DNA of 64,000 nt from IMG/VR virus record IMGVR_UViG_3300044974_001280, positions 1-64,000 of that record. One strand, given 5' to 3'. Positions 45,151 through 63,376 of this stretch are shown here, one piece after another. The notes under the pieces were generated by a model, which saw only the letters and a program-made list of their open reading frames with translations, did no database searches and was not told the origin of the DNA. Both the position numbers and the translations under genes were made by a program. Each line of letters starts with the position of its first letter. Positions within the stretch are counted from its first letter, which is position 1.

Positions 45151-45633
45151 TTGAAACATATCCTCAGCCTGCATGAATTTTTCGACACAGGAATCTTCGG
45201 AGACACTTACGGCTATGGGGGAGCAAATGGAATTTTTAAGGTTGCCTATAAACCATATAAAGATCTCTCCGTTTCGGTAGGTCCGGATCCCAAAGTTCCC
45301 CGCAACATTCCTGGTTCTAAATTTCAGGTGGGAGACATCGTCATTGGAATGCCGATCGAGGGCAAGAAAAAAGTTGCCGGCATGGTGGTGAAAAATGTGC
45401 TGGCACCAGACCAAAAAAGCTACAAATATTTCGTCCAGGTCCACACTAAAGGGAAAAAAGAACAGAAAGTAATGGAACTGGTTCCTGATTCTGTCGAGTT
45501 TGTAGATATGGGGGACAAGGGACATCGCCAGATTGTTTCTCAGTATAAGTTCAACGATCTACCAGGAGATGTGTACAATTCTAAAACAGTCTACAACAAT
45601 CCTGGTTTGGGGATAGAGGCTGTTGGTTCTTAA
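45151..45633 (+). CDS. Hypothetical protein with CTS-like N-terminus and SH3-like core
   Basis: MKHILSLHEF; FQVGDIV. Confidence 0.65.
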   Translation: MKHILSLHEFFDTGIFGDTYGYGGANGIFKVAYKPYKDLSVSVGPDPKVPRNIPGSKFQVGDIVIGMPIEGKKKVAGMVVKNVLAPDQKSYKYFVQVHTKGKKEQKVMELVPDSVEFVDMGDKGHRQIVSQYKFNDLPGDVYNSKTVYNNPGLGIEAVGS

Positions 45634-45635
45634 GG

Positions 45636-45663
45636 GAAACTTTTTGTTCATCTTCCTGTAAAA
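45636..45663 (+). promoter_or_regulatory. Putative ECF-type promoter
   Basis: GAAAC-N17-GTAAAA. Confidence 0.6.
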
Positions 45664-45669
45664 ATTCAG

Positions 45670-46554
45670 ATGATTCTCAGTAAAACAAGACACGGCTTGG
45701 GTGTCGTGTATCGACATTCTAATTCAGGATTGGAACCTCAGGAAGAAGCTTTAAATTTTTTAAATGTGATGCTTCGGAAGGTCTCCCAGAACAATAAGCA
45801 CGGAATTGATGTTACCTGTCTTGAGCTAAAAGAGTCGGATTTTCCCAAATTTTTCTACGACAGAACCTCTGAGTGTGATCCTTTGCAAGAAAGGATTCAC
45901 GAGCTTTCAGGCTTCTTAAAAGCCTCGAACCATCGTCTTTTTTTCTTCCTGTCTTCCTATTACTACTTCGGGAGTCAGTTGACCCAGCCCGTTGAAGACA
46001 CCCGAAAGATTGTGCAAAACATCTACCATTTGCTCGAGGATCTCGGAATTCAATATCCTGCTGTCATTCTGAAGATCGGATCTGCCTATGGGAAAAGAAA
46101 AGAAACGATGGCCAGATTTGTTGAAGAAATAAATTGTTTAGAACCAGAGGTCAGAAAAGTGCTGGCGGTAACAAATGACGATAAACCATCTCTCTTCTCG
46201 GTTACCGATCTGCTGTCCGGGATTTTTTATTCCTCTGGAATTCCCATTTGTTTTCGTACTTTGGCCCACAATTTTAACACCGGAGACTTATCGGTCAGAG
46301 AGGCTCTTTTTCTGAGCTGCTCGACCTGGCAAAAGGGGATTAAACCAATTTTTCTGCATGCAGAAAGTCTCAAAGTTGATCCAAAGGGGTTTCCTTTGAG
46401 TCCCTTGCCTTCCGAGGATTTAAAATACAGAATTCCTGTTTTTGGTTTGGATGTGGATGTTGTGATAGAATGTCCCACCTCTTTTGAGACTGCCGTTAAA
46501 TATCTAGGAGCATATCAGAGTCTTAAACCTTTGGTAATTGATAAAGACTGGTGA
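45670..46554 (+). CDS. Divergent UV-damage endonuclease (UvsE/UvdE-like)
   Basis: IGSAYG.R..T..RF, TNDDKPSLFSV.DL, STW...KP and DVVIE motifs; several metal ligands substituted. Confidence 0.65.
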   Translation: MILSKTRHGLGVVYRHSNSGLEPQEEALNFLNVMLRKVSQNNKHGIDVTCLELKESDFPKFFYDRTSECDPLQERIHELSGFLKASNHRLFFFLSSYYYFGSQLTQPVEDTRKIVQNIYHLLEDLGIQYPAVILKIGSAYGKRKETMARFVEEINCLEPEVRKVLAVTNDDKPSLFSVTDLLSGIFYSSGIPICFRTLAHNFNTGDLSVREALFLSCSTWQKGIKPIFLHAESLKVDPKGFPLSPLPSEDLKYRIPVFGLDVDVVIECPTSFETAVKYLGAYQSLKPLVIDKDW

Positions 46555-46586
46555 AATTTTATCAGAGCTAGATCAAAAAATTTTCT

Positions 46587-46594
46587 TAAATTTG
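46587..46594 (+). promoter_or_regulatory. Bacteroidota-type -7 element TAAATTTG
   Basis: Perfect TAnnTTTG, ending 5 nt before the ATG. Confidence 0.55.
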
Positions 46595-46598
46595 CTGC

Positions 46599-47402: not shown

Positions 47403-47417
47403 ATAAAAAATAAAAAA

Positions 47418-48148: not shown

Positions 48149-48183
48149 ACTGGTTTAGATATATACTCTAAACCAGTTTTTTT
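48149..48183 (+). terminator. Intrinsic terminator whose stem/loop contains a GATATATA late motif
   Basis: ACTGGTTTAGA-TATATAC-TCTAAACCAGT plus T run; GATATATA at 48158-48165. Confidence 0.8.
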
Positions 48184-48888
48184 GTGGCCTACATTTCAGA
48201 TTTTGAAAATTTTCTTCTAGTTGAATCCGATTCAACTTCCCAGCCTGTTTTTAACGGGATCTGGGATCCTATGGTAGACGGAAAGGGAAAAAGACACTGG
48301 AGGTTGAATGTGTTAGTCTTATCCAAACTCAAAAAGATAGCAGAGGAGGCTCACGATCACTGCCGGGGGAATTTCCAAACTGAATTAAAGGATGTGGTTC
48401 TACTGTGTCCTGCTAATTTTACGAATTCCGAGGACGATCTGGATCTGGTTCTGCTCGTGGAAAAAAGAGGGAATTTAAAAAAAGGATCCAGATCAGAAAT
48501 GGAAGACCAAATGAACGAACATCTCTCTGACTACGTGGCTGAAAAAAACCCCCGTCTTAGAGGCAAAGAGGTGGAGATAGAAGCTTCTACATCCGATTAC
48601 TTTCCTAAAAGGCTAGGAGTTTATTCACTTTTTGACAACAAGTGGCTCCAATCACCTCCCTCTGATCAGGATTTAGATTTTGTGGGGGTATCAGTCAAAA
48701 AAATTATCGGAGCAATCAAAAAACTAGATTCTTCTTCTTTATCAGAGACCCCCCGAAAAAAAATTCAGAAAATATCCAGACAGATCCAGAGACTCAAAAG
48801 ATCCGGTCCAACTGGCATAGGGTCCTACAATCATCTGTTGTCGGGTGGATATATACACAAAATAATGGATCTCCTTTCCAAAAAATAA
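48184..48888 (+). CDS. Degenerate nucleotidyltransferase-like protein with CTS-like N-terminus
   Basis: MAYISDFENF; DVVLL...AN...DDLDL...GVYSL..NKW pattern but lacking the GS motif. Confidence 0.5.
   Translation: MAYISDFENFLLVESDSTSQPVFNGIWDPMVDGKGKRHWRLNVLVLSKLKKIAEEAHDHCRGNFQTELKDVVLLCPANFTNSEDDLDLVLLVEKRGNLKKGSRSEMEDQMNEHLSDYVAEKNPRLRGKEVEIEASTSDYFPKRLGVYSLFDNKWLQSPPSDQDLDFVGVSVKKIIGAIKKLDSSSLSETPRKKIQKISRQIQRLKRSGPTGIGSYNHLLSGGYIHKIMDLLSKK
48848..48855 (+). promoter_or_regulatory. Putative late promoter GATATATA (inside upstream CDS)
   Basis: Recurrent motif, about 40 nt before ATG 48896. Confidence 0.55.
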
Positions 48889-48895: not shown

Positions 48896-51397
48896 ATGTA
48901 CACCATTCTCGACACAAAAAAAATCATCAAGGGCAGTTATGCTGACCCTAAAAAAGAACCTGGTATTTTTCCAATTGTTAATTTACCACTGGACGACGAG
49001 GGCGAGGACATGGAGTTAAACGACTTTCAGTGGGTTGCCCCAACAGATAGATGGTTGGAGTGGTTAAAAGAAAACCCCAGAGATTGGCAAGCCGAGAGCG
49101 AAGATTCTCGATATGAATTCGACTATATTCTGGTTGAATCATATTCAACAGAGGAAGATCCCTACCTATTTCTATTTCAACCTCAAAATTACGACCAGCC
49201 CACATCAGAAAGTTATCTCCAGTCCTTCGATGAGTTTGCCCAGATCTACGAGGAGGAATTGGACGGTGGATCGGAGGAATTAACAGGCAGAGCGGTCAAA
49301 CTTGCCTTTGCCTTAGAGAAATTAAACAAAGAAGGCAAACTGAAAGAGGAGCTCAACCCCAGCGAGCTAGACAAAGCTAAAGAATATGCCATCATTTTCG
49401 ACCCGGTCGACTCCGCCAAGAACGAGGTCATTCCAAGCGGGAGAAACGCAGTCCGATTTAAACTTCTCTCTCAAGATGAAGACACAATTTCAGTTGGTAA
49501 AATAGATTATTCCCTGTTGACCGACGAAGACCTGCCCGACAATATGACAGCTGAAGAGCAGAGTGAGTGGATGAAAGGGTTACTTGATGAGGCAGGAGAC
49601 ATAGGAAAGGCAGGGATCTGGGGTTTAACTGCCTATGGTGTAGCAACAACTGTAGGTGGAACAGTCGGTACCTATCTTAGTTATAAGGGTATTCAGAAGT
49701 GGATGCGAAGAGGAACTACAACACCTCCTCCAGGTGGTACCCCTCCAGCCGGTCCTGGTTTAGTATCCAGAATTGGAACCTGGCTCAGCGGACGTAGAGC
49801 CTGGCTTAGCGGAACACGAGCAGCCTCAGGACTAAGATCACTTCACGTTGCGGCAGCTGGAATTCCAAGACTTGGCTCTTTATTTGGAGGAGCCGCATCC
49901 GCTGCTGCCGGAGGGTCAGCTGCAGTTGGAGCCGGTATAGCTGCTGGTGTTTTAGCAATAGTTTCAGCTGCCCAACAAGTTTATAATTGGTCGTCTACCA
50001 ATCAAGCTCCCACATACAGTAAACTGAAATCTTTCGCCAAAGATTCTTTCGTTCCTAGAAACACTCCTGCCGGTGGTTTAATTACTGTGTGTTGGACCGC
50101 AGACGGAGGGAAAGGTTTTTGGGGAAATATAACAAATATCTTCAAAGACGATACTAGAACAACCATGAATCTAATGAAGCTGGCAAACACGGATAAAAAA
50201 GCTGTTTTTCTCCTTCTCTCTGTCAACTCTGAACAAATCCAAAAAGAGAGGAACCAGTACGATGCTATTCTTTTTTCTTTCGATCTAGATTCTGCTTTTG
50301 AACACGGATATTTGGATAACGACGATTTAGAATTCCAAATCATTAGGATCAAACCTCTCAGTGATTTCTCGACCCCGACCTCGTTTGTCGCCTACTGTGA
50401 ATGGTCGGAACTAAAATCAGCTTTTGATTCGGCTCCAGATAGTCCGTTTGTTGTTCCGGCAGATGCTCCTGACAGCTATGTCTTTAATTATCAGCAAGGA
50501 GATCAGAGAGCCAATATACAAGGTTCTCTTCTATCAGCTGAAACCATAGCTTCTCAACGTAGTTTGTTTGAGAGTGATTCGGCAGATCTTTCGGATGTTG
50601 TCTTTATTAGTAACACCTCGGTTCTGGAAGGCAACAAGGCTTTAGGCTTCAATGAATTCTGGAGATCTAACTCTATCTCTCTGTTCGAAGAAGACAAAAA
50701 TTCAGCAGATGAGAGCAAAAAAGATTCTAAATCGGTTCAATTAGGAATCTCGAAAGATTCGGATTATTCACAAACCGAAATCATAGTGTACGAGGTCAGT
50801 AGTAACGAATTTGCCAACCCCAATGCCAGCGGAAACCCTCCAGAAGTTAACTACTTTATAGTAGACAAAAGAAGCTTATCAGCCACTGATGGCCAATCTG
50901 TGAAAGTTGAATCGTCGGCAGGAAAAAGATTCCAGGATGCTAAATACGGTTTAGCAATTTATAAAGAAGAGACCGAAGACACAAAACAGAAAAAAGGGGA
51001 AGGAGATGAAGAAGATGAGGAATCTTTAGCCCCAATTCCACCAACAGATGGCAAAAAAGACACAGGTTCATTACTCACCTCTCCTGATGATGTTTCAATC
51101 AAGGATAGAAGAAGAAGAACTGTTATTAAAGACAAACCAACCAATAGGGAGGAAGATGTCAATATTATAGATGATATTCTTACAAACGATGATAAAAAGT
51201 CTTTAGGTATTCAGGATTGGAAAACCCTCACAAAAATAGTTCTAGTTAAAGATAAAGAAGGTTATCCAGAAAAAGTCATTCTGAAAAATCAAACCCAAGG
51301 CAGAGATAGAACTAGAAGAATTAAGAGAGGTGAATCAGGATTTGAAACCGCTGTTAAGATAGCTGATAAGGTTAAAAGTTCAATCAAATACAAATAA
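48896..51397 (+). CDS. Large hypothetical protein with Gly/Ala-rich hydrophobic segments (possible ejected/membrane-inserting protein)
   Basis: GGAASAAAGGSAAVGAGIAAGVLAIV segment; internal F.EF motifs. Confidence 0.65.
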   Translation: MYTILDTKKIIKGSYADPKKEPGIFPIVNLPLDDEGEDMELNDFQWVAPTDRWLEWLKENPRDWQAESEDSRYEFDYILVESYSTEEDPYLFLFQPQNYDQPTSESYLQSFDEFAQIYEEELDGGSEELTGRAVKLAFALEKLNKEGKLKEELNPSELDKAKEYAIIFDPVDSAKNEVIPSGRNAVRFKLLSQDEDTISVGKIDYSLLTDEDLPDNMTAEEQSEWMKGLLDEAGDIGKAGIWGLTAYGVATTVGGTVGTYLSYKGIQKWMRRGTTTPPPGGTPPAGPGLVSRIGTWLSGRRAWLSGTRAASGLRSLHVAAAGIPRLGSLFGGAASAAAGGSAAVGAGIAAGVLAIVSAAQQVYNWSSTNQAPTYSKLKSFAKDSFVPRNTPAGGLITVCWTADGGKGFWGNITNIFKDDTRTTMNLMKLANTDKKAVFLLLSVNSEQIQKERNQYDAILFSFDLDSAFEHGYLDNDDLEFQIIRIKPLSDFSTPTSFVAYCEWSELKSAFDSAPDSPFVVPADAPDSYVFNYQQGDQRANIQGSLLSAETIASQRSLFESDSADLSDVVFISNTSVLEGNKALGFNEFWRSNSISLFEEDKNSADESKKDSKSVQLGISKDSDYSQTEIIVYEVSSNEFANPNASGNPPEVNYFIVDKRSLSATDGQSVKVESSAGKRFQDAKYGLAIYKEETEDTKQKKGEGDEEDEESLAPIPPTDGKKDTGSLLTSPDDVSIKDRRRRTVIKDKPTNREEDVNIIDDILTNDDKKSLGIQDWKTLTKIVLVKDKEGYPEKVILKNQTQGRDRTRRIKRGESGFETAVKIADKVKSSIKYK

Positions 51398-51462: not shown

Positions 51463-53493
51463 ATGAGTCTAGGTCCTTTTGGAGAAGATATGGTTTTCAT
51501 TCTGGAAAAACAGAATCACCATGTTAATGTTTCGAAACAGAAAGTAGATGGGGACAATGTTTACACATTGAAAGGAATTGCTGCTCAATTTGGTAAAGAA
51601 AACAACAACAATAGAATCTACGAAGAAGCAGAATATCTACCCCATCTTGACTACTTGAACGAGAAAATCAAACAAAAAAGATTGGTTGGTGAACTAGATC
51701 ACCCCGAGAAATTTGATGTCTCTCTCAGAAACATTTCACACATCATCGAAAATCTCGAGTATGATAAAAACGGTCGGGTACTGAACATTAAAGTCAAGTT
51801 GCTTGATACTCCCGCAGGTCAGATTGCCAAGAAGCTGGTTGATGCCGGTGTTCCTCTTTCTATTTCTTCAAGAGCTGCTGGTAATGTGGGTCCGGATAAA
51901 AAGGTTCAGATCAAAAAGATCTTCACTTACGACCTAGTCGCAGATCCTGGTTTTCAAGACGCCCAATTAGAAAGAGTCTATGAAAGCGCGGGCTTTTCTT
52001 TTTCGGAATTCGCCGACAAGACTAAAAATTCCATTGTGAGCCATTTAGAGTGTATCAATGAATCTTTGGGTCTAAAAAATAACGATTCAGTAAAGATATA
52101 TAGAGTCGAAAATAACGAAGAATTCGAAAAAATATTCACAACAGAAAAAAATAACATCGATATTATGGAGTCACAAAAAAGAGAATTCGTTACGGCCGAA
52201 GAGCTCAACAAATATTCTATTTTTCTGAAAAAGAAAATGGAGGAAATGGAAATGCAAATTCAGGAGATGAAGAGCAGTTCACCACAGTCAAGCAATGCAT
52301 CTGAAAATGCTCAGCTGTTGGAGAGAATTGACCGTCTAGAAGAATATTCCGAATATCTAGCCGAAAATTTAGAGGATGCTATCAAATACGGCGAATATTT
52401 GGCTGAAAATTTGGACGACTCCATCAATTACAGCAAGTATCTGGCCGAGAGCCTGGATAAATCGATCTCTTACTCGAAGTATTTGGCCGAGAATGTAGAC
52501 AACTCTATTTCTTATTCAGAATACGTAGCAGAGAATGTGGATAGAACCATCAACTACTCGAAATATTTGGCAGAAAAGATCGACGATGGTATTCAGTACA
52601 GCGAGTATGTGGCTGAAAACCTAGGTAACAGTATTGCCTACTCTGAATATCTGGCCGAAAACGTCGACAGAGGAATTGCCTACTCTGAATATCTGGCCGA
52701 GAAGGTTGATAGGAACATTTCGTACTCTGAATATCTGGCCGAGTATATCGATAAAGACATCGCCTACTCTGAATATCTAGGAGAAAAAATAGATCAAGGT
52801 ATTTCTTACTCTGAATATCTGGCTGAAAAACTAGATCAGGGTATCTCTTATTCGGAATATCTGGCTGAAAATGTGAACAGGACTATCTCTTACTCTGAAT
52901 ACATTGCAGAAAAATTAAACGGCACAATTGAATTTGGTGAGGCACTATCAGAAAAAGTTGGTTATCCAACCCATCTGAATTCCAGAGCCAGATCAGAAGC
53001 AAATCTTGCCGCTAAAACTGAATTATTTGAATCAGGATTTGCCGGGGATTATAATAACCTCGGAAGTCAAATCGATTCATTAATCGAATCGGTCCAAACC
53101 CAAAAGACCGAATTAACCCGGGCCCAACTGGTTGGAAGGCCCTCTGCCCACACTCCAAAGGCAGAAGAGATGCTCAACGAGAATCAATCAGCCACCATTT
53201 CCTCCTCAGGTCATAAATTTATCGACGAAATGCCGGAAAATTATGCTCCAATTTGGGAATCTCTCAACGAAGGACAGAAGCAATCTATTATTGCTCAGTC
53301 CGCTTTCTATCGATTGGAGACACCTTATCAGATCAACAATTTCTGGTCTACTCGTAACTTGAGGAAAGAAACGGTGACTATGCAGAGACTCGATGAGAAT
53401 CAACAAACCCATGCTCTTCCCCAGTCGACGACTCGTGCTTATGGAAGTGATTACCTAAACTGGGTAGCTCAATCACTGGAGAAAAGATTCTAA
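51463..53493 (+). CDS. gp21: Prohead protease (gp21-like) fused to a scaffold-like region
   Basis: N.N.RIY, GELDHP, LLDTPAG, ISSR and TYDLVADPGF, followed by coiled-coil repeats; upstream of the capsid gene. Confidence 0.9.
   Translation: MSLGPFGEDMVFILEKQNHHVNVSKQKVDGDNVYTLKGIAAQFGKENNNNRIYEEAEYLPHLDYLNEKIKQKRLVGELDHPEKFDVSLRNISHIIENLEYDKNGRVLNIKVKLLDTPAGQIAKKLVDAGVPLSISSRAAGNVGPDKKVQIKKIFTYDLVADPGFQDAQLERVYESAGFSFSEFADKTKNSIVSHLECINESLGLKNNDSVKIYRVENNEEFEKIFTTEKNNIDIMESQKREFVTAEELNKYSIFLKKKMEEMEMQIQEMKSSSPQSSNASENAQLLERIDRLEEYSEYLAENLEDAIKYGEYLAENLDDSINYSKYLAESLDKSISYSKYLAENVDNSISYSEYVAENVDRTINYSKYLAEKIDDGIQYSEYVAENLGNSIAYSEYLAENVDRGIAYSEYLAEKVDRNISYSEYLAEYIDKDIAYSEYLGEKIDQGISYSEYLAEKLDQGISYSEYLAENVNRTISYSEYIAEKLNGTIEFGEALSEKVGYPTHLNSRARSEANLAAKTELFESGFAGDYNNLGSQIDSLIESVQTQKTELTRAQLVGRPSAHTPKAEEMLNENQSATISSSGHKFIDEMPENYAPIWESLNEGQKQSIIAQSAFYRLETPYQINNFWSTRNLRKETVTMQRLDENQQTHALPQSTTRAYGSDYLNWVAQSLEKRF
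52345..52932 (+). repeat. 14 tandem 42-bp (14 aa) repeats YSEYLAE(N/K)xDxxIx
   Basis: Direct translation; tactctgaatatctggccga recurs. Confidence 0.92.
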
Positions 53494-53519: not shown

Positions 53520-55241
53520 ATGAAACTAATTAACGAAGCCGAGATTTTTGATACCTGGGCACCTATTATTGAACAAAAAGCTGGTATCACTGATCCCTCA
53601 AAACAAACTTGGTTGGCAAAATATTGCCACTACCACTCCCTCAACGAGTCTGCCGGTGCATATCAGTCGTTGAATGTCGTCAACGGTATGGGTGCCGTTA
53701 CACCTCCTACCTTCCCAGCAGCAACAGCAGCCGGTTCTCTTGGCGGTCTAACTCCTAACCAAGGATTCTACAGCCAGTCTTGGCAAGGATCTGGCGATAA
53801 GTTCCCTTCACTTCTTCCTTTGGCTATTCAGGTAGCTGCGAAGACTGTAGGTTTCGACATCGTTCCAGTTATTCCAATGTCCGGTCCTTCTGGCGTTTTG
53901 TCCTACCTTGACTATGTGTATGCCGGTGGTAAGATCAGCCCGCAAAACGCCGGAACTACAGCTGCCGAGGCTTTGGCAAATGCTCCTACAATGATCAAAT
54001 TGCAAATCACTACCCAGACGAACATGTCTTTACTAGAGGTAGGACCAAATACACCAGGTACAGATTATTACATCTCCAACGCCAGTGCTTCAGCTACTGA
54101 ATACATCACTGCTAGGTTTGTAGGCTACTCTAGAATTGATGGATTTCCAATTTTTGAAATCACAGCAATGACCGCAGGTGAAACTGTTGCCTCCGTTCTT
54201 AGCGGAGGTGCTTTCATTGGTACTACAATTGCCGGAGATGAAGTTGGTAGTACCACAGCTACTGCTTCTCTGGTTAAGGCTCTAGAGGATCACATTCAGG
54301 GTTTCTCTGGTGCAGGTTTTTATGACGATCAGAATTGGCAAGGTCCCTTCACCGATGGCACACAGACTTACAATCCGATGCTAAGAAGTGTAGGTGAAGA
54401 AAACTACTACAATTTGATGGGTCTAACGACTTTCACTAAGTTCGTAGAAGCCGACACCTTCCAGGTAGCCGCTTCCGTTACCACGGAGCAAATCCAGGAT
54501 CTCAACAAGCAATTCGGAATCGATGTTATCTCAATGATCGAAAACGCATTGGTGAATGAGGTTTCTCAGGCTATCAACAAGCACATCTTGTCAAGGGCAT
54601 TTGCTTTAGGATGGTCTAACACCTATGCTTTCTTCCAAACAGAAGCACAGAATTTGAACTTGAGCCTAGTATTGGGTGGTGCAACAGGAACTACCCTTGC
54701 CTATGTTACTAAAACTGACGGAACCCAATCAATGTCTATCCCAGCCGGGCCTGCTAATGGAGGTTACGAGAATTTGTCAACTCTACAGAGAAGGCTTTTC
54801 TCCCGGATCTTGGCAGCTGCCAACATGGTAGCTAACAGAGGTAGAAGAGGTCCTGCTAACTTCATTGTTACCAACGCTAATTTGGCTTCGGCAATGCAGG
54901 ACATCAGCCAATTCACTTTCGCTCCTTTCACTAACACCTTGACTCAGAACAATGGTACTCTGTATCCAGTAGGTTCTTTGGCAGGTATGACTGTCTACGT
55001 CGATCAAAACATGAGATTCTCCGATAACCGTATCCTAGTCGGTAGAAAAGGTGGAGACGACGAGCCAGGTCTAAAATTCATGCCTTACATGATGGCTGAA
55101 TCTATCCAGACTATCTCCGAGGGAACTATGTCTCCTAAAATCGCGGTCAAGTCTCGTTACGCTCTAGTAGAAGCTGGTTTCCACCCAGAAACCATGTATG
55201 CTACTTTCTTCGTACAAGTTCCGGTTGGAGGTATCAACTAA
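53520..55241 (+). CDS. gp23: Major capsid protein (gp23-like)
   Basis: PMSGPSG, EQIQDL, EV...INK, ANRGRRGPANF, PY and KSRY motifs. Confidence 0.92.
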   Translation: MKLINEAEIFDTWAPIIEQKAGITDPSKQTWLAKYCHYHSLNESAGAYQSLNVVNGMGAVTPPTFPAATAAGSLGGLTPNQGFYSQSWQGSGDKFPSLLPLAIQVAAKTVGFDIVPVIPMSGPSGVLSYLDYVYAGGKISPQNAGTTAAEALANAPTMIKLQITTQTNMSLLEVGPNTPGTDYYISNASASATEYITARFVGYSRIDGFPIFEITAMTAGETVASVLSGGAFIGTTIAGDEVGSTTATASLVKALEDHIQGFSGAGFYDDQNWQGPFTDGTQTYNPMLRSVGEENYYNLMGLTTFTKFVEADTFQVAASVTTEQIQDLNKQFGIDVISMIENALVNEVSQAINKHILSRAFALGWSNTYAFFQTEAQNLNLSLVLGGATGTTLAYVTKTDGTQSMSIPAGPANGGYENLSTLQRRLFSRILAAANMVANRGRRGPANFIVTNANLASAMQDISQFTFAPFTNTLTQNNGTLYPVGSLAGMTVYVDQNMRFSDNRILVGRKGGDDEPGLKFMPYMMAESIQTISEGTMSPKIAVKSRYALVEAGFHPETMYATFFVQVPVGGIN

Positions 55242-55359: not shown

Positions 55360-56052
55360 ATGTCATACATTTTAGATTTTGAATCTTATGATTCTGGAAG
55401 AAAAAAATCTGAGGACACTCTGGATGAAAAATCTCTACTAGCTCTAGAATCCTGGATTGAAGACCTGAACGAATCTCGACTACTGGACGAAATAAAAAAC
55501 AGATTTTCCAAACTGTTGGGCGGTTTTTCTAATATCAATGCAATAGACGAAATTAGAAAAGGTATGCTGAAACTGAAAAAAGAAATTCTGGAGAAAAAAT
55601 ACGAAACCCAAGAAGAGATCTCAGATTTAGAATTAAAACTTGAGCAACTAGAGCAGAAGAAAACTAAAACATCTACCGATAAAACAGCTATTGAGGCAGT
55701 CGAAAAAGAAATTATAGCCAAAAAAGAAGAGTATAGAGCTTTCTTAAAAAGTCAAAACGACAGAATGCAGAAAGGCAAAGAACTGCTCCAGAAAACAATA
55801 AGCAAAAAAGACCGGCTCAAGAGGTACTTAGAATCTGTCGAGACTGATGATAAATTAGAAATCTCTGAGTATGAGTACGAGCTGGCCAAAAAACACTCGG
55901 CCGATGCGGCTGAAATCTCTAAATTAAAGAATCGAATAGATAAGGCAAAAAAAGATGCCAAAGATCTATTAAGCTCTTTAAGAAAAAAGCCCAGTCCGGG
56001 CGCAAGAGGTTCAACAAACTCGTCAAGCTCTGGTTGGGGATTTTTTCCTTGA
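55360..56052 (+). CDS. Coiled-coil protein with CTS-like N-terminus
   Basis: MSYILDFESY; LNES site. Confidence 0.7.
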   Translation: MSYILDFESYDSGRKKSEDTLDEKSLLALESWIEDLNESRLLDEIKNRFSKLLGGFSNINAIDEIRKGMLKLKKEILEKKYETQEEISDLELKLEQLEQKKTKTSTDKTAIEAVEKEIIAKKEEYRAFLKSQNDRMQKGKELLQKTISKKDRLKRYLESVETDDKLEISEYEYELAKKHSADAAEISKLKNRIDKAKKDAKDLLSSLRKKPSPGARGSTNSSSSGWGFFP

Positions 56053-56103: not shown

Positions 56104-57048
56104 ATGTTGTACACATTCGAACAATGGGATCAAAACCTAAAACATAAAACCGGATCGGTCGAAGAGAGTGTTTCCCTTCAGGGGATTCTGAAGTGGTTTT
56201 CAAACACTTTTGGCGGGGACAAAAATAAAATCGATCTGCTCATTTCGGATCTCCAGGAGATAGAATACAAATTTGCCGAAGAATGGAATGAGATTCAGGT
56301 GGATATCGACGAACTAGAAGTACAGAAAGCTCAGATCAAAAACGACCCAGCCGAAATTAGAAAACTAGAAAGGTTAATCGAAAGAAACGATAGATTGTTG
56401 GATGCCTTAACCAAAAAGAAAAGAACTGCAATCTCAGAAATAGAAAGCAAAATAGAAAAAATAACCGACAAGAAACCAAAATTGGTTTCTTATTGGAATT
56501 TGCAGAAAACCAAAGCCGAGGCAGAAATAGCAGAAAATTTGTATCAATTGGCTAAAAAATTATCCAGGGAAGAAGTAGCAGAAGAACTTTACTCCAAGTA
56601 CAAAGAAGCTTCTCTCAGGGCAAAAAAGAAAGACGAGGAATTTAAAAGAAAATTTGGAAACCTAAAAATGCCATCAGGCCTAAAAACAAGAGTACCTAAA
56701 GAAGACAAAGAAACCTCTAAAAGAACTTCAGTGCCGGCAGAAATCTCCCACAAGTACACTGCGGAGTTTGAAGAATCGATGGATTTTCCTCCCCTCGAGT
56801 TCGATCGTTATGTTAAGGGACTAGATAAGAAGGTAGTTCAGCAGCTCAAGAAATATTTAATTGAGCAAAGGAATGAAAGGTATGTCTTGATCGATAGTAG
56901 AGAAGCCAAAGTCAGCGAGATGAAAAAAACTATGAGTGCCGTAGAGGCCAAAGAAATCCAAGCCAGATTCATAGAATTCAGGAAATCTACCATGGAGCAG
57001 ATCCGTCAGCTTCGCACAAAAATAACTATTTGCAATAGATATGATTAA
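56104..57048 (+). CDS. Coiled-coil protein with CTS-like N-terminus, likely paralog of previous gene
   Basis: MLYTFEQW; shared FS...GG...ID pattern. Confidence 0.7.
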   Translation: MLYTFEQWDQNLKHKTGSVEESVSLQGILKWFSNTFGGDKNKIDLLISDLQEIEYKFAEEWNEIQVDIDELEVQKAQIKNDPAEIRKLERLIERNDRLLDALTKKKRTAISEIESKIEKITDKKPKLVSYWNLQKTKAEAEIAENLYQLAKKLSREEVAEELYSKYKEASLRAKKKDEEFKRKFGNLKMPSGLKTRVPKEDKETSKRTSVPAEISHKYTAEFEESMDFPPLEFDRYVKGLDKKVVQQLKKYLIEQRNERYVLIDSREAKVSEMKKTMSAVEAKEIQARFIEFRKSTMEQIRQLRTKITICNRYD

Positions 57049-57301
57049 AAAATTTGACTCCTTTAGACTGAACGAGGATGTGAACAAGGACCTCTCTACA
57101 GCTAAAAAGCTTGTTAACGATCAGATGGATCTGATTCGTCAGGAGATTAGCAATGAAAAATCGCAGGAGGATCCACTCCAAAAGATCGGCAGTATTAAGA
57201 AGCAAGCCACGCTATATGCAGCCTTGCCTGCTCTGTTGAATAAACTAGCTGCTGCCATGGATGCAAAACAAAAATCAGGAGATAAAACAAACGTCTATTA
57301 A
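57041..57301 (+). CDS. Small protein with CTS-like N-terminus
   Basis: MIKKFDSFRLNED. Confidence 0.7.
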   Translation: MIKKFDSFRLNEDVNKDLSTAKKLVNDQMDLIRQEISNEKSQEDPLQKIGSIKKQATLYAALPALLNKLAAAMDAKQKSGDKTNVY

Positions 57302-57302
57302 T

Positions 57303-59771
57303 ATGAACAATTATTTCAGGAGTAACCCAGTAGCACATCAATTTCTTATCAGTACTCTGAATTTAAACGAGAATGCCTCGGTCGACAATTTGTTGAAGAA
57401 AACCACAGAGGCAGCTTTGGACACTTTCAAAAAGATCGTTTTTGATTTAACCACCAAAGAGAACAGAAACCCAGATAAATTTAGGAGTATGCTCAATGAG
57501 GTTGGGTCTGCCAAAGGGGTTAGAGGAATGATCGCCAAGATGAAAGATTTCGCAGAAGAAGCTGATATTTCTGATTCAAAATTAGCCCAGGTAAAGCAGA
57601 TCTATCTGGATGCCTTGGGACAAGTGGGAGAGGCTTTAAAAAGATTGGTTGAGATAGATGGTAAAATGGGAGCCATGATTTTGGATCACTATCGGCTCAT
57701 GGCAAAGAGACTTATCTCGGCCATGGATGATATTGCCTCTGCCTATTCTAAGAAGATTCTTCTAACTGAAAATTTTAGGACTGCCCTGAATTTGCCCCTT
57801 AACGAATCAGAAAACGTTGGGTTCCACGGGAGGATCAACAAGCTGAAGAAAAAGTTGGTTAATCTTATTTCAGATGCACAGGGAAAAGATGCCAAAAACG
57901 GATATGGCAGAGACTGGCAAAGGCTTTTCTCTGGGATCCACCAAAAACTCGAGGCCCTGATCAGCGATAAATCAGTTGTCTCCGAGCGGGAAAAGAAAAG
58001 TTTGCTAGAGATAGAAAAGCAGTCCGATAATTTAGCGGAAGAATATTACAACTACAAGATTAAGGCGGCTGAATTGACGATGAAGAAAATTATTGATGAT
58101 GATGAATTAGTAACCAAGTTTTCCGATGTAACTGATCTGTTGACCAAATCTTTAGATCTTATAGCCAAGGCTAACGTGCAAGAAGTTCTGATCGACCAGA
58201 AAATCAGAGAGGAATTGGAAGAGGTTGAAAACAAGATCGTGCAGAAGGTTTTTCCCGTCCGCCCGGGAGCGAAAGATTCTGATCTGAAGTTCAAAAAATC
58301 AGGTCTCATCTCTGCTGTGCAAAAGGCCTTAATGTCTGCATTTCCCTCTGTCAAAAAACTGCTTTCTGACCACGAGAAAGACAGTGGCACTTTTGGTCCG
58401 GCTACATCCCTGGCTATCAAATCCATCCAGACCTCATTGGGTAACAAAAATGCTAATGGTGACCTGGATAAACCCCTGCTGGATCTGATCTTGACTATGG
58501 AACAGGTAGCCGACGTGGACAAGAAAAAGATTTCAGCCGCTCTTAAATCGCTCAAAAGCTCCTATGCCATGTCAGAATCAAGAGTCCTGCAGATGTCCGA
58601 TTTCTCCAGACTTTCCGAGGCGGTTTATATCGATGATGATGACTTGCAAAAAGAAATCGAAAGAGGTCAGGAGGAACTGAAGAAATCTGGGTCTGGAAGT
58701 CTTTCTCATCTAGCCTCGGACGAAACGACGGGTGCGGATACAGCTCTGGCCAAGAAGCTGGCCAAATTACTGAGAGGAGGTGGTTTTAATAAAAACGCCG
58801 AAGAAGAGGATTTTTTAAAAGACGATGGCACCTTTAAGAATTCTTACCCCACCCGTTTTATCGAGTCTTGGCTCCAGTGCCTTTCTGCCACCAAAGAATC
58901 CAAAGACAAGCCTGGTTTCTTCTGGATCCAAGGACCTGATGAAAAAATTGGAGCACTATATTCAACCAAAAGAATTGCAGGAAACGTTAAAAAACCCTAT
59001 AACTGGGCCAAATGGAAAGAGATTTCAGGTGATGATTCTCAGGAAGAGAGAGAAAGGTTTGCCCGTTGGTATACCTCCTATTTCTCAGGTTTCGGGGGAC
59101 TCATGGACAAACAGAGATTGAATGTTGCCTCAGAGATTCTAACCTACTACGGAGATCCAAAAAACAGTACTGAGGCACCTGAAAATCTTCAATCTGAATT
59201 TAAAGACTACTGCTCAGTTTACGATGGTCTGAAAGATGTTCTGAGAAGCGGCAGAACTTCAAGGGACTCAGAACCCTATCAGTATTTTGCCCAAGGCTTG
59301 TTGACGAAAGAGACCATGAAGAAAATCTCTGAAGCTGTTTCTAAATTTTCTCAGTTGGACAAATCGGATCCAGATTTGACTTTTTATGATTTTATGATCT
59401 TAACAGTGTGTGTGTTTTTAACGGCTTCCTGTGTTGCCTGGGACGAGTCTAATAGAAAGTGGGCTCCTGCCTTTTCTATTTTGACCGACGGTGCACTATC
59501 TGATTCGGTTGTTAACAGAATCCTAGACGACCAGATTCACGATGCAGATCCCAGCGCACCCGTTCCTCAGATGTCAAAAGAATCTGGAGCCATGGTTATC
59601 AGCAAGGGCTACGATGGAAAAATCAAGACCATTTTCAAACAGAACTACAACAGAGCCCAAAAAGTATTAGAACCCCTGGTACAAAGACACGCGGACCGGA
59701 TGAACTATGTTGACAAAGACGATATAGAAAATTTCGATCGAGAAAATGTGTATGTAATTCCGAATTCTTAA
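57303..59771 (+). CDS. Large helical protein with a peptidoglycan-binding-like domain
   Basis: AVQKAL...GTFGPAT..AIKSIQ...GDLD pattern; LNE sites; ATG 57303 follows the upstream stop. Confidence 0.6.
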   Translation: MNNYFRSNPVAHQFLISTLNLNENASVDNLLKKTTEAALDTFKKIVFDLTTKENRNPDKFRSMLNEVGSAKGVRGMIAKMKDFAEEADISDSKLAQVKQIYLDALGQVGEALKRLVEIDGKMGAMILDHYRLMAKRLISAMDDIASAYSKKILLTENFRTALNLPLNESENVGFHGRINKLKKKLVNLISDAQGKDAKNGYGRDWQRLFSGIHQKLEALISDKSVVSEREKKSLLEIEKQSDNLAEEYYNYKIKAAELTMKKIIDDDELVTKFSDVTDLLTKSLDLIAKANVQEVLIDQKIREELEEVENKIVQKVFPVRPGAKDSDLKFKKSGLISAVQKALMSAFPSVKKLLSDHEKDSGTFGPATSLAIKSIQTSLGNKNANGDLDKPLLDLILTMEQVADVDKKKISAALKSLKSSYAMSESRVLQMSDFSRLSEAVYIDDDDLQKEIERGQEELKKSGSGSLSHLASDETTGADTALAKKLAKLLRGGGFNKNAEEEDFLKDDGTFKNSYPTRFIESWLQCLSATKESKDKPGFFWIQGPDEKIGALYSTKRIAGNVKKPYNWAKWKEISGDDSQEERERFARWYTSYFSGFGGLMDKQRLNVASEILTYYGDPKNSTEAPENLQSEFKDYCSVYDGLKDVLRSGRTSRDSEPYQYFAQGLLTKETMKKISEAVSKFSQLDKSDPDLTFYDFMILTVCVFLTASCVAWDESNRKWAPAFSILTDGALSDSVVNRILDDQIHDADPSAPVPQMSKESGAMVISKGYDGKIKTIFKQNYNRAQKVLEPLVQRHADRMNYVDKDDIENFDRENVYVIPNS

Positions 59772-59803
59772 TTGCAAAAGGACTTAGTTTGAATTTTTAT
59801 TCT

Positions 59804-59811
59804 TATATTTG
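59804..59811 (+). promoter_or_regulatory. Bacteroidota-type -7 element TATATTTG
   Basis: Perfect TAnnTTTG upstream of ATG 59834. Confidence 0.55.
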
Positions 59812-59833
59812 GGTTCTTTATAAACCCATAATT

Positions 59834-60790: not shown

Positions 60791-60791
60791 T

Positions 60792-62195
60792 ATGTGTGGA
60801 ATTTTACTTTCCTTATCCGGGACCGACTCTGTTTTGAATAGCATCTCCCATCGGGGAATAGAAAGGAACACCCTAGAAAGAGATGGTGTTTTTTTAACCC
60901 ACCATCGTCTGCCCATTCAGACAGAGGCAGGAGACGGCTGGAAGCAACCTCTAGAAATTTCTCCTGGCATTTTCTTGATGTACAACGGAGAGATCTTTAA
61001 CTATGATAAATCTCTTTACACCTCTGATATTGATTATCTGTCCCGCCTTTTTGGGACTTGGACGGGAGGGGATTTTCAGATGTTCTGTGCAATTTTTCTA
61101 GCCCGTATTCAGAACTGGGATGGTTTTTGGTCCGTAGTCATCTACGATTCAAAGCAGAAGAATGTTATTTGCTTTACTGACCCTTTGGGTAAAAAATGTT
61201 TGTATAAGAACGAGGACGGGGAATTGTCTTCTGAAATTAAGTCCCTGGTGACCGAGTTTTCTCCACTTGATGTTTCCTATTTAAGTTCGGTAAAGAAATT
61301 TGGTTACGTGCCAAACGGTGACACTCCTTACCGAAATGTGAAGAGGCTGCTTCCCAACACAATCTATTCTTATTCTCTTCAGAGTCCTGATTTTGTCACA
61401 GTCTTTCCTCACTATTACAGATTTTTGAATTTTCCTCTTGCTGAATTATCTAATGCCTCCTACGATGAGCACATGGAGTGGTTATGGAACAAACTTTTCG
61501 AATCCGTTCAGAACAGACTTCTGTCTAAAAATTATCCTATTTCTCTCCTGGTGTCAGGGGGTTTAGATTCTTCTATCATAGCTGGTATTTTATCCGAATT
61601 AAAAGCTAGTACTACCTGGTTTAGTATCGAAAACGGAGAAAGAGAATACGTGGATCTTCTCTCCAAACATCTGGGACAAGAGGTTGTGTTTTTGGACTAC
61701 GAGGTTCAAAACGAAAAAAACGCCGAAATTTACGCCAGATGGAACGAGGGCCCGGTCGATCTAGGCTCGGTTATTCCCCAATATTATTTGTTCGAGTCCA
61801 TTAAGAAATTTGGTCAGCATCGGATAGTTCTGAGCGGGGATGGAGCAGATGAACTGTTTGGAGGTTATTCTCGCATTTTGGATTACGATTCCCAACAATC
61901 AGATGTCTTTCAAGAACTGTCTTTTTATCATTTACCCAGATTGGATAAACTCTCTATGGCTCACACTCTAGAACTGAGAAACCCTTTTTTGCACCTCGAT
62001 CTAGTCAGATTTGCCTTGTATCTGCCTTTGGAATGGAGAACAGGCAAAAAAATTCTTAAAGACACTTTTGGTCCTTTGCTCCCTTCTGCAATAATCGATA
62101 GACCCAAGGAGGCCCTTAAAAATCCTTTAATCAAACAGGATAAAATCAAATACAGACTCTGGGTAGCGGATCTCTTTGAAAACAATCATATTTAA
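60792..62195 (+). CDS. asnB: Asparagine synthetase B-like glutamine amidotransferase
   Basis: MCGI, HRG, NGEIFN, SGGLDSS, SGDGADELFGGY and E.R.PFL motifs. Confidence 0.9.
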   Translation: MCGILLSLSGTDSVLNSISHRGIERNTLERDGVFLTHHRLPIQTEAGDGWKQPLEISPGIFLMYNGEIFNYDKSLYTSDIDYLSRLFGTWTGGDFQMFCAIFLARIQNWDGFWSVVIYDSKQKNVICFTDPLGKKCLYKNEDGELSSEIKSLVTEFSPLDVSYLSSVKKFGYVPNGDTPYRNVKRLLPNTIYSYSLQSPDFVTVFPHYYRFLNFPLAELSNASYDEHMEWLWNKLFESVQNRLLSKNYPISLLVSGGLDSSIIAGILSELKASTTWFSIENGEREYVDLLSKHLGQEVVFLDYEVQNEKNAEIYARWNEGPVDLGSVIPQYYLFESIKKFGQHRIVLSGDGADELFGGYSRILDYDSQQSDVFQELSFYHLPRLDKLSMAHTLELRNPFLHLDLVRFALYLPLEWRTGKKILKDTFGPLLPSAIIDRPKEALKNPLIKQDKIKYRLWVADLFENNHI

Positions 62196-62206
62196 AATCT
62201 TTTGGA

Positions 62207-62214
62207 GATATATA
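62207..62214 (+). promoter_or_regulatory. Putative late promoter GATATATA
   Basis: Recurrent motif. Confidence 0.7.
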
Positions 62215-62257
62215 AGTCAGATGTTGCATCTACCTTATAAAAAACCAAAAGATTGTT

Positions 62258-63001
62258 ATGATTAAAAAGTTTTCTGAATTTAGAAATAGGGTCACACCAG
62301 GTCCCGATGACCAACCTGAACTCAATGAAGGAATAGGAGATTGGCTAGGTCAAACCTTTGGCAGTATTTGGGGAGGAGCCAAGGATCTATTGACCAAAAA
62401 AATAACAGCTCATCTGCTCAGTAAACTTGGTATCGAGGAGAATAGCATTTTCGCAGAGCTGGTGAGCAAATTCGTTCAGCAAATCCCAATCAGTGACTAT
62501 TACGGTATTTTGTTCAATTCTAAACTGAACGCCAAATACTTGGCTCCCAAAATGGCTGAAGCGGCAATGGAATTTATTTCAGGCCAGGGTTACGATGGTA
62601 TAGCTCAGTCTTTAGGTTTTAATCGTGATGGATTAATATACCAATTATTAAGGGAGACCTTCACTAACGAGGCAGCTAAATTGAATTTTAAAAAGAATTT
62701 AGAAAATTTCTTCCTATCGGTGTTTCAAGGATTTCCATCCACTAGTGCGACTGAATTTGAAAAAAGTTTGACTAGTTCTGAAAAATCCGCCTTAACGAGG
62801 CCTCTTCTTCAAACAGCCAAAGATAAAGGAATAAAGATGGATAAATCTGCTAGGGGAGAAGGAAATATTCTGACTAATTTCCTTACTAACATGCAGAATG
62901 CTAACCAGGCTAACTCTGCCCAAATTGCATCTTCCTCAACCACTTACAATCAAGGTCTAACTGCTCAGCAGTATGAAGATTTAATAAAATTCAGATCTTA
63001 A
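62258..63001 (+). CDS. Hypothetical protein with CTS-like N-terminus
   Basis: MIKKFSEFR...ELNEG. Confidence 0.7.
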   Translation: MIKKFSEFRNRVTPGPDDQPELNEGIGDWLGQTFGSIWGGAKDLLTKKITAHLLSKLGIEENSIFAELVSKFVQQIPISDYYGILFNSKLNAKYLAPKMAEAAMEFISGQGYDGIAQSLGFNRDGLIYQLLRETFTNEAAKLNFKKNLENFFLSVFQGFPSTSATEFEKSLTSSEKSALTRPLLQTAKDKGIKMDKSARGEGNILTNFLTNMQNANQANSAQIASSSTTYNQGLTAQQYEDLIKFRS

Positions 63002-63019
63002 AAATATAACCCCGAATTT

Positions 63020-63376
63020 ATGAACATTAACGACGTTGCCCAAAGAGAAATTTTAGATTTCAAACAGTTCAGAGGAAAGGTAATGGATGACACCTACAAA
63101 CCTTTCGATCCTCAGAATCAGAAGGACTCTTATTCTAGAACAGGACTGCACCCCATCAAAAGGGAACCTGCTTATGATTTCGTAGGGTACGCGGACGCCA
63201 TCTTTTCTCCTGACAAGGCTGGTATTGGCCTGCCTGGTTACAACGCAGGACAAAGCAGACAGTACATCAACGCTATCGGTGGTCCTGGTCTGGCACAAAC
63301 CCCTGCTACTAACGAGTCTGAAAATCAGGAAATTGACGAACCTATAATTTTAGGTCTCAGAGATTTTAGAGGCTAG
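63020..63376 (+). CDS. Hypothetical protein
   Basis: ILDFKQF motif near the N-terminus. Confidence 0.65.
   Translation: MNINDVAQREILDFKQFRGKVMDDTYKPFDPQNQKDSYSRTGLHPIKREPAYDFVGYADAIFSPDKAGIGLPGYNAGQSRQYINAIGGPGLAQTPATNESENQEIDEPIILGLRDFRG

What the first reader, a model, noticed from the sequence alone, without database searches (positions are those of the whole stretch)
45151..63376. Family of proteins with a T4-like capsid-targeting sequence
Seen: N-termini MKHILSLHEF, MAYISDFENF, MSYILDFESY, MLYTFEQW, MIKKFDSF, MIKKFSEF and ILDFKQF, often followed by (L/I)xE. Internal copies occur in 48896 (LQSFDEF, LGFNEF) and 57303 (LQMSDF). Most of these genes are downstream of GATATATA. Known: T4 internal proteins use MKTYQEFIAE-like signals that gp21 cleaves after E. 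Inference: a large cargo of packaged, injected proteins, which are candidates for anti-defence or host-takeover effectors.
Basis: partly seen in the sequence, partly recalled or inferred. Interest (0 to 1): 0.6.

Follow-up and report, generated by a model that had tools for sequence, protein, structure and literature searches.

The report
Capsid-targeting leaders on jumbo-phage proteins
An uncultured 230-kb freshwater phage puts a short T4-like "address label plus cut site" on the front of about 25 unrelated proteins, including enzymes, which most likely loads them into the capsid; this points to which proteins the phage may deliver to its host along with its DNA.

Summary
The window is the first 64 kb of a 230,445-bp lake-water jumbo phage. 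Its head module is T4-type: a gp21-like S77 protease fused to a scaffold, and a gp23-like capsid protein.

The N-terminal motif is hydrophobic-xx-F/Y-xx-F/Y/W, usually followed by L/I/V-N-E.
- It is about three-fold enriched at N-termini: 34 genes against 10.4 expected, P 5e-9.
- The enrichment recurs in two related whole genomes (P 1e-13 and 8e-15).
- It sits on about 22 unrelated protein families.
- Orthologues in 80 related loci keep it while the mature parts diverge to 23-45% identity.
- Conservation is at the amino-acid level, not the nucleotide level.

The motif has the T4 capsid-targeting architecture: aromatics three apart, then L/I-x-E. The capsid protein carries an invariant LNE|S at the likely end of its propeptide. 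GATATATA is a late-type promoter shared with structural genes. Carriers are basic (median pI 8.6 against 5.5).

Outside the window, carriers include an adenylate kinase, a RimK-like ligase, a lysozyme-domain protein and peptidoglycan-binding proteins.

Packaging, cleavage and injection are inferred, not shown. The carriers beside the capsid gene may be prohead-core proteins. The 63020 copy is not a leader.

The parts
45151..45633 (+). 160-aa basic protein (pI 9.1). Short leader at 45151-45177 (MKHILSLHE|FFD); orthologues read MKHIKTINE|FFD.
48158..48165 (+). GATATATA late-type promoter, 26 nt before gene 48184. Further copies in or near the finding are at 44580, 48848, 51431, 55332 and 62207.
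48184..48888 (+). 234-aa protein with leader at 48184-48225 (MAYISDFENFLLVE|S). The mature part has a Pol-beta-type nucleotidyltransferase-like fold. Model residues 1-24 are disordered.
48896..51397 (+). 833-aa head-module protein with two internal leader-like units that may be cut out: 49214-49252 (YLQSFDEFAQIYE) and 50624-50689 (ALGFNEF...SLFE). Both are conserved in about 40 orthologues and are bounded by xxE.
51463..53493 (+). 676-aa prohead protease-scaffold fusion. It has 29 L/I-x-E sites, 4.3 per 100 aa against a genome mean of 1.3.
51496..52140 (+). gp21-like S77 protease domain carrying GELDHP and ISSRAAG. It aligns with T4 gp21 at 29% identity over 111 residues.
52345..52932 (+). Fourteen tandem 14-residue repeats (42-bp period) with core YSEYLAE, predicted as one long helix. 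Every orthologue with a complete protease gene has 10-14 copies.
53520..55241 (+). gp23-like major capsid protein. The likely propeptide is 53520-53648 (residues 1-43), ending in an invariant HSLNE|SAGAY. This is the last Glu before the conserved core. The N-terminus aligns with the T4 gp23 propeptide.
55360..56052 (+). 230-aa K/E-rich protein with leader at about 55360-55428 (MSYILDFESY...LDE|K). Orthologues read ...HKQFLIE|RD. Possibly a prohead-core protein.
56104..57048 (+). 314-aa K/E-rich protein with leader at about 56104-56166 (MLYTFEQW...VEE|S). Orthologues read MTLKFKEWEELNE|A.
57041..57301 (+). 86-aa protein with leader at 57041-57076 (MIKKFDSFRLNE|D).
57303..59771 (+). 822-aa protein. 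The true start is at 57303, judged from orthologues. A different 23-aa leader ending in LNLNE|N lies at 57303-57371. An internal unit lies at 58569-58619 (MSE|SRVLQMSDFSRLSE|A).
62258..63001 (+). 247-aa protein with leader at 62258-62329 (MIKKFSEF...ELNE|G), close to T4 IPI (MKTFKEF...ITE|A).
63020..63376 (+). 118-aa protein. The conserved REILDFKQF at 63044-63070 (the cited ILDFKQF is residues 11-17) is not N-terminal and has no cleavage motif. Probably not a leader.

Best explanation
The motif is a T4-type capsid-targeting propeptide. It is a short N-terminal amphipathic stretch with a hydrophobic residue and two aromatic residues, each three apart. I propose that it binds the prohead core while the head is being built. 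After the shell closes, the gp21-like protease cuts behind the next L/I/V-x-E, most often L/I/V-N-E, and frees the mature protein inside the head.

About 25 proteins of this phage carry it, and 30-45 in larger relatives.
- Some are probably core or scaffold components: 55360, 56104 and 57041. The two roughly 830-aa proteins also belong here; their internal copies look like linkers that are cut out.
- The rest are basic internal proteins and enzymes: an adenylate kinase, a RimK-like ATP-grasp ligase, a lysozyme-domain protein, peptidoglycan-binding proteins and a nucleotidyltransferase-fold protein. These would travel with the DNA and could act in the next host.

Shown here: the motif, its enrichment, its conservation, its portability, the cognate protease and capsid protein, and the shared promoter.
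Inferred: binding to the core, cleavage, presence in virions, and ejection.
For: 1. T4-type head machinery is adjacent. The protease matches Pfam S77 (4e-8) and phrog_207 (1e-37) and aligns with T4 gp21 including the His and Ser motifs. The capsid protein matches Pfam Gp23 (2e-39) and aligns with T4 gp23 over its full length, propeptide included.
2. The architecture matches the T4 targeting sequences read from the T4 record and their mapped determinants.
3. N-terminal enrichment is found in three genomes. The compact form [FYW]xx[FYW][LIVM]xE, which T4's YQEFIAE fits, occurs at N-termini 26 times against 5.7 expected (P 4e-10).
4. The cut motif prefers N before E (46% against 9%). The capsid protein has an invariant LNE|S at the likely end of its propeptide.
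5. Orthologues keep the leader and cut site while the mature parts diverge. The conserved mature sequence begins right after the E, for example ...LNE|GGAAI...NE|SDGFGT...NE|MKYGQP and FLNE|RELPD.
6. The mature parts are unrelated apart from one paralogue group. In the adenylate kinase the leader precedes a Pfam ADK domain that begins at residue 26.
7. Codons differ between leaders, so selection acts on the peptide.
8. The leader genes share the GATATATA promoter with neck, sheath, tube, portal and protease genes.
9. Carriers are basic, as T4 internal proteins are: median pI 8.6 against 5.5, P 6e-6.
10. The leader is disordered in the model of the 48184 protein.
Against: - There is no proteomic, structural or genetic evidence. 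The phage is uncultured.
- The capsid-protein cut site is inferred, not mapped. BLAST places the T4 cut site about 20 residues further on, in a stretch that has no Glu here.
- Some carriers lack a nearby hydrophobic-x-E: 131843, 158793 and 165306.
- The leader-like start of the ClpB-like gene 166327 is absent from three orthologues.
- An encapsidated adenylate kinase or RimK-like ligase has no precedent known to me.
- Leader genes are no more variable between genomes than other genes. This differs from the fast-changing T-even internal-protein loci.
- 'Late' timing of the promoter rests on the genes it precedes. RNA contigs could not show transcript starts.
Confidence: 0.75

Rival explanations
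1. The leaders are assembly propeptides of prohead-core and scaffold proteins only. The carriers help build the head and are then degraded or expelled, so little or nothing is delivered to the host.
For: The in-window carriers 55360, 56104 and 57041 flank the capsid gene. 55360 and 56104 are K/E-rich (27-29%), and 55360 has twice the mean density of L/I-x-E sites. T4 gp22, gp67 and gp68 behave this way.
Against: Many carriers are folded enzymes or wall-binding proteins with few internal cut sites, and they lie far from the head module. Their mature parts are conserved and basic. That fits retained internal proteins better than disposable scaffold.
Confidence: 0.12
2. The N-terminal motif is a signal for something other than the capsid. 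Examples would be recognition by a phage chaperone or unfoldase, a regulated pro-sequence, or docking at a membrane or assembly site. In that case the E-containing motif is not a prohead-protease site.
For: Enzymes such as an adenylate kinase are unexpected capsid cargo. No binding partner was demonstrated; the complex prediction could not be run. An amphipathic helix can serve many purposes.
Against: The same motif occurs inside two head-module proteins, bounded by xxE. The preferred hydrophobic-N-E equals the invariant site in the capsid-protein propeptide. The close match to the experimentally defined T4 signal, together with the T4-type protease, makes an unrelated function unparsimonious. 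The leader has no hydrophobic core of the Sec or Tat type (read from the sequences).
Confidence: 0.1
3. The similarity reflects a nucleotide-level cause: shared 5' gene ends spread by recombination, a translation-initiation constraint, or wrong start-codon calls. It is not a peptide signal.
For: The three tandem paralogues 147039, 148157 and 148953 do share nearly identical 5' DNA. My gene calls take the longest frame, and a few starts had to be moved.
Against: Leaders of unrelated genes use different codons for the conserved residues. The motif survives at 23-45% identity of the rest of the protein. The reversed motif and shuffles show no comparable enrichment. Internal copies exist far from any start codon.
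Confidence: 0.03

Closest known systems
Capsid targeting sequences of T4 internal proteins IPI, IPII, IPIII (also Alt and gp24 propeptides), cut by gp21 after L/I-x-E
   Same: - An N-terminal label of 10-20 residues.
- Aromatic or hydrophobic residues three apart (T4 Y4 and F7), followed by L/I-x-E.
- A cognate S77 protease and a gp23-type capsid protein.
- Portability onto unrelated, mostly basic proteins.
- Some sequences are close: 62258 starts MIKKFSEF and T4 IPI starts MKTFKEF; a relative has MEKLKSFSEFLAE|A and T4 has MKTYQEFIAE|A.
   Different: - About 25-45 carriers per genome instead of a handful.
- Often one helical turn longer, with three hydrophobic positions.
- N is preferred before the E.
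- Carriers include metabolic and ligase-type enzymes.
- Internal copies that may be cut out occur in two large head proteins.
- The protease is fused to a repeat scaffold.
- The phages are only distantly related to T4 (capsid protein 22% identical).
- Nothing has been tested experimentally.
Propeptides of head and ejection proteins of phiKZ-like giant phages (phiKZ, 201phi2-1, SPN3US)
   Same: Many internal head and ejection proteins are processed by a gp21-related prohead protease after Glu. The propeptides are thought to target the proteins into the prohead (PMC5694885).
   Different: Those propeptides are mostly over 100 residues long, with cut motif A/S/G-x-E and no shared short N-terminal consensus. 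Here the leaders are 9-28 residues with a clear consensus and L/I/V-N-E.
T4 scaffolding core protein gp22, and the 'prohead core scaffolding protein and protease' of Tenacibaculum phage PTm1
   Same: A helical scaffold, rich in cut sites, that the protease degrades. T4 gp22 has 16 L/I-x-E sites. PTm1 also fuses protease and scaffold, with internal repeats.
   Different: Here the scaffold part is 14 near-perfect 14-residue repeats with core YSEYLAE, which has the same pattern as the T4 targeting heptad. PTm1's repeats differ, and no clear leader family was seen in its capsid locus.
Cargo-loading peptides of encapsulins, and head-incorporation of Dar proteins in phage P1
   Same: A short portable tag, or a dedicated partner, loads unrelated cargo into an HK97-fold shell.
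   Different: The encapsulin tag is C-terminal and is not removed. I did not test the P1 Dar system here and name it from general knowledge only. There is no sequence relation to either.

Membership tests
T4-type capsid targeting sequence (gp21-processed N-terminal propeptide) | Lies at the extreme N-terminus and is about 10-20 residues long | tested here: met
   Predicted leaders are 9-28 residues. The motif starts at residue 2-4 in most carriers. 63020 fails this.
T4-type capsid targeting sequence (gp21-processed N-terminal propeptide) | Two aromatic or hydrophobic targeting residues three apart (T4 Y4 and F7) | tested here: met
   The [FY]xx[FYW] core is conserved in carriers and their orthologues. 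The T4 determinants are taken from PMC9026906 and the T4 sequences.
T4-type capsid targeting sequence (gp21-processed N-terminal propeptide) | Ends in the protease motif L/I-x-E | tested here: met
   The motif is present after most leaders. The residue before E is N in 46% against 9% in the background. Conserved mature sequence starts right after the E. A few carriers lack it.
T4-type capsid targeting sequence (gp21-processed N-terminal propeptide) | A cognate gp21-family (S77) prohead protease with catalytic His and Ser, and a gp23-type capsid protein with a propeptide | tested here: met
   Pfam and PHROG hits, pairwise alignments with T4 gp21 and gp23, and invariant GELDHP and SSR columns.
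T4-type capsid targeting sequence (gp21-processed N-terminal propeptide) | Portable: found on proteins that are otherwise unrelated | tested here: met
   All-against-all comparison of the mature parts finds only one paralogue group and one weak pair between two K/E-rich proteins. The leader is added in front of recognised enzyme domains.
T4-type capsid targeting sequence (gp21-processed N-terminal propeptide) | Made together with head proteins (late) | tested here: inconclusive
   The promoter motif is shared with structural genes. Timing was not measured; RNA contigs show only that the scaffold and capsid genes are in metatranscriptomes.
T4-type capsid targeting sequence (gp21-processed N-terminal propeptide) | The leader directs the protein into the prohead and is removed there; the mature protein is found in virions and ejected | not testable with these tools
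   Needs virion mass spectrometry or a reporter fusion.
phiKZ/SPN3US-type long propeptides | Propeptides mostly over 100 residues, cut after A/S/G-x-E | tested here: not met
   Leaders are 9-28 residues and the position three before the cut is L/I/V. Family features are from PMC5694885.

The most novel reading that the evidence does not exclude
The docking site for the leaders is the protease's own scaffold arm. That arm carries 14 helical repeats with core YSEYLAE, the same pattern as the compact leaders (FSDFLIE, FCNFLNE) and the T4 signal (YQEFIAE). On this reading each leader is a single-copy mimic of a scaffold repeat. It would co-assemble with the scaffold and be cut by the same protease at the same position.

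The phage clade would then use a simple, readable code to load dozens of proteins into its head for delivery into freshwater Bacteroidota-like hosts. These would include an adenylate kinase, a RimK-like ATP-grasp ligase and a nucleotidyltransferase-fold protein.
Probability: 0.25. Interest if true: 0.8.

Novelty: new variant of a known kind. Interest (0 to 1): 0.62.

Why it matters
If the leaders work as in T4, the internal and injected proteome of an uncultured, widespread clade of lake jumbo phages can be read straight from sequence. Packaged proteins are the first phage proteins to meet the host. Examples are T4 IPI against restriction and Alt acting on RNA polymerase. A motif-defined list of 25-45 candidates per genome is therefore a direct route to new takeover or counter-defence functions, including unexpected enzyme cargo.

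The finding also extends the T4 targeting code to phages whose capsid protein is only 22% identical to T4's. It gives a compact consensus that could be tried for loading foreign proteins into capsids. It also links the signal to a repeat scaffold fused to the protease, which bears on the open question of what the targeting sequence binds.

Tried and rejected
There is no result in either direction.
2. A position matrix built only from the 361 scaffold repeat units (ISYSEYLAE) does not score N-termini above internal segments in any of three genomes. Leaders as a class are therefore not shown to resemble the repeat beyond the loose pattern [FYW]xx[FYW][LIVM]xE. That pattern is enriched.
3. The ClpB-like AAA+ gene 166327 was considered as cargo. 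Its leader-like start is missing in three orthologues, so I dropped it.
4. 63020 was rejected as a leader.
5. Tenacibaculum phage PTm1 is the nearest cultured relative found, with capsid protein 31% identical. Its capsid locus shows a protease-scaffold fusion and INE sites in the capsid protein but no clear leader family. LR756500 (44% identical) has degenerate copies of the same 14-residue repeat and at most one leader-like start in 30 kb.
6. I tested whether leader genes are more variable between genomes, as T-even internal-protein loci are. They are not.
7. The monomer model of the protease-scaffold has low confidence (mean pLDDT 52). I used it only for 'long helix'.
8. Foldseek on the 48184 model gave only weak matches (E 3e-3, TM about 0.25) to CD-NTases, TENT5 and MNT. 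The fold class is a lead, not an assignment.
9. An Atlas feature search of the 45151 protein gave nothing usable; the best score of 0.84 is within chance.
10. RNA runs are held as contigs only, so transcript starts at GATATATA could not be seen.
11. There is no bS21 gene, so this is not one of the published bS21 phage clades.
12. The paper library holds no description of targeting-sequence-like leader families in metagenomic phages.

Full report
**What the window is.** It is the first 64 kb of a single 230,445-bp IMG/VR virus record with a CheckV completeness estimate of 85%. Nearly all genes are on the + strand and GC is about 0.40. PHROG scans identify a neck protein, large terminase, tail sheath, tail tube, two tandem portal paralogues and a DNA ligase upstream of the finding. 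The same DNA occurs in at least 14 lake-water metagenome samples. The capsid protein is 70-85% identical to those of 80 IMG/VR loci. It is 44% identical to the uncultured phage LR756500, 43% to Lak megaphages and 31% to Tenacibaculum phage PTm1. This is therefore an uncultured freshwater jumbo phage. The host is not established; Bacteroidota are likely by analogy only.

**The head module is T4-type.**
- Gene 51463-53493 matches Pfam Peptidase_S77 and phrog_207. It aligns with T4 gp21 across GELDHP/GELNHP and the SSR serine motif. Both are invariant in 28 orthologues.
- Its C-terminal half holds fourteen 14-residue repeats (42-bp period) with core YSEYLAE. The repeats are kept at 10-14 copies in every orthologue with a complete gene and are predicted as one long helix.
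- With 29 L/I-x-E sites, this protein has the highest site density of any protein over 150 residues in the genome. That fits a scaffold that its own protease dismantles.
- Gene 53520-55241 matches Pfam Gp23 and aligns with T4 gp23 from residue 1.
- Its first 52 residues are almost invariant in the clade and end in HSLNE|SAGAY. E43 is the last Glu before the conserved core. I take LNE43 as the maturation site. This is an inference, and the BLAST alignment puts the T4 site a little further on.

**The observation.** All the cited N-termini exist, and the motif is not confined to the stated interval.
- Genome-wide, [ILVM]xx[FY]xx[FYW] starts in the first 15 residues of 34 genes against 10.4 expected (P 5e-9). 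No shuffle out of 500 reached this. The commonest register is M-x-x-hydrophobic-x-x-F-x-x-F, with 10 genes against 0.7 expected. The reversed motif is not comparably enriched.
- Two related genomes that I fetched whole show the same thing: 44 against 11.2, and 59 against 17.7.
- After the aromatic pair comes L/I/V-x-E within a few residues. In 190 distinct leaders the middle residue is N in 46% against 9% in the background. The next residue is mostly A, S, D, K or G.

**It is a peptide signal, and it is portable.**
- Orthologues of 48184, 55360, 56104, 57041 and 62258 in the 80 loci keep the leader and the cut motif while the rest is only 23-45% identical.
- Outside the window the same holds for 119543, 124859, 125449, 128800, 131843, 132590, 141865, 145554, 161302 and 163487. 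The conserved mature sequence typically begins immediately after the E.
- Codons for the conserved residues differ between genes.
- Mature parts are unrelated except for one paralogue group (147039, 148157, 148953, 158793) and a weak match between 55360 and 56104.
- In the adenylate kinase the leader precedes a Pfam ADK domain that begins at residue 26. All five relatives examined keep it as ...F(L)NE|RELPD.

**Internal copies.** The two copies in the 833-aa protein (48896) and the one in the 822-aa protein (true start 57303) are conserved in about 35-40 orthologues. They are bounded by xxE, often as ...NE|S-x-V-L-S-F-x-D-F-...-x-E|. They look like linkers that carry the same binding motif and are cut out. 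The 57303 protein has its own conserved 23-residue leader of a different kind, which also ends in LNE.

**Comparison with T4.** The T4 record gives IPII and IPIII as MKTYQEFIAE|A and IPI as MKTFKEF...ITE|A. It gives gp22 as MLKEQLIAE.. and gp24 as MAKINELLRE... According to PMC9026906, targeting by the IPIII signal depends mainly on residues 4 and 7, and processing on residues 8 and 10. The protease cuts after L/I-x-E. The leaders here have exactly this layout, and some are close in sequence. The compact heptad [FYW]xx[FYW][LIVM]xE, which T4's YQEFIAE fits, is found at N-termini 26 times in the three genomes against 5.7 expected.

**Expression and properties.**
- GATATATA occurs 47 times, almost always 9-75 nt upstream of a start in the right orientation. 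It precedes neck, sheath, tube, portal, protease-scaffold and endolysin-like genes, and about 17 leader genes. Association with the leader has odds ratio 5.5, P 4e-6. It behaves like a late promoter in the manner of T4's TATAAATA, but timing was not measured.
- Lake metatranscriptome contigs cover the scaffold part and the capsid gene.
- Carriers are basic, with median pI 8.6 against 5.5 (P 6e-6). This fits proteins that lie with DNA.

**What the carriers are.**
- In the window: two K/E-rich proteins and an 86-aa protein beside the capsid gene, plausibly core components; a nucleotidyltransferase-fold protein (48184) whose G[GS] motif is lost in this genome; and proteins of unknown function.
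- Elsewhere: an adenylate kinase, a RimK-like ATP-grasp ligase, a lysozyme-domain protein and two peptidoglycan-binding-domain proteins.
- None was identified as an anti-defence protein.

**Verdict.** The T4-like targeting interpretation is the best explanation (0.75). Packaging, cleavage and injection remain inferences, and part of the family is probably structural. The idea that the leaders dock on the YSEYLAE scaffold repeats is attractive but unsupported beyond a shared loose pattern. The complex prediction could not be run. The paper library holds no description of such a leader family in metagenomic phages.

Noticed in passing
window 35507-37111 and 37117-38742: Two tandem portal-protein paralogues (both phrog_213), 52% identical. 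Only the first has a GATATATA in front (35441).
   Followed up: partly
window 7304, 12867, 15460, 18236, 21820, 29227, 31592, 35441, 44580, 48158, 48848, 51431, 55332, 62207; 47 copies in the genome: GATATATA, usually preceded by G or A, is a strongly over-represented and correctly oriented promoter-like motif in front of structural, lysis and leader genes. It is presumably the late promoter of this phage clade. Relative G001 has 37 copies on + and 8 on -.
   Followed up: partly
window 53492-53520: A 29-nt run, nearly all A, fills the gap between the protease-scaffold stop and the capsid-protein start. An RNA contig spans the junction. It may be a translation-initiation region that lacks a Shine-Dalgarno sequence.
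   Followed up: no
window 52345-52932: Fourteen near-perfect 14-residue repeats (core YSEYLAE) form the C-terminal arm of the protease. They are kept at 10-14 copies across the clade and are degenerate in LR756500.
   Followed up: yes
window 48184-48888 and orthologues, e.g. L036:4358-5149: Orthologues carry a classic Pol-beta nucleotidyltransferase signature (TGS...SDLDVHV). The window's copy and its closest relatives have lost the G[GS] part, so it may be inactive.
   Followed up: partly
window 45670-48122: A DNA-repair cluster sits between leader genes. It comprises a UvdE-like UV endonuclease (Pfam 5e-12), a protein starting MPELAEV in the manner of Fpg/Nei glycosylases, and a 234-aa protein that looks like an exonuclease by eye. 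Only the first was tested.
   Followed up: no
genome 147039-149936 (- strand; L085:3039-5936): Three tandem paralogues have identical leaders (MKHLQSFSLFE|A), each with its own GATATATA 12-13 nt before a GTG start. A fourth, diverged copy is at 158793.
   Followed up: partly
genome 161302-162768 (L085:17302-18768) and 141865-142497 (L084:17865-18497): A RimK-like ATP-grasp ligase (with a weak, sub-threshold Pfam Zn_protease match in its C-terminal part, E 0.007) and an adenylate kinase both carry conserved leaders. They would be unprecedented capsid cargo.
   Followed up: partly
window 51400-57400: Lake metatranscriptome contigs from four runs in at least three studies match 52.2-55.2 kb at 99% or more, and match almost nothing of 55.3-57.4 kb. 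The phage appears to be active in situ. RNA libraries can contain DNA, so this is weak evidence.
   Followed up: partly
window 45019-45525 (- strand): A 168-aa antisense frame overlaps gene 45151 and is longer than it. A longest-frame gene caller picks the wrong strand here. The orthologues support the + strand gene.
   Followed up: yes
window 59789-60199: A small protein has an internal start, MNRNWFSIFLAVTISC..., that reads like a lipoprotein signal peptide. It lies between the head-module genes and an asparagine-synthase-like gene (60792-62195).
   Followed up: no
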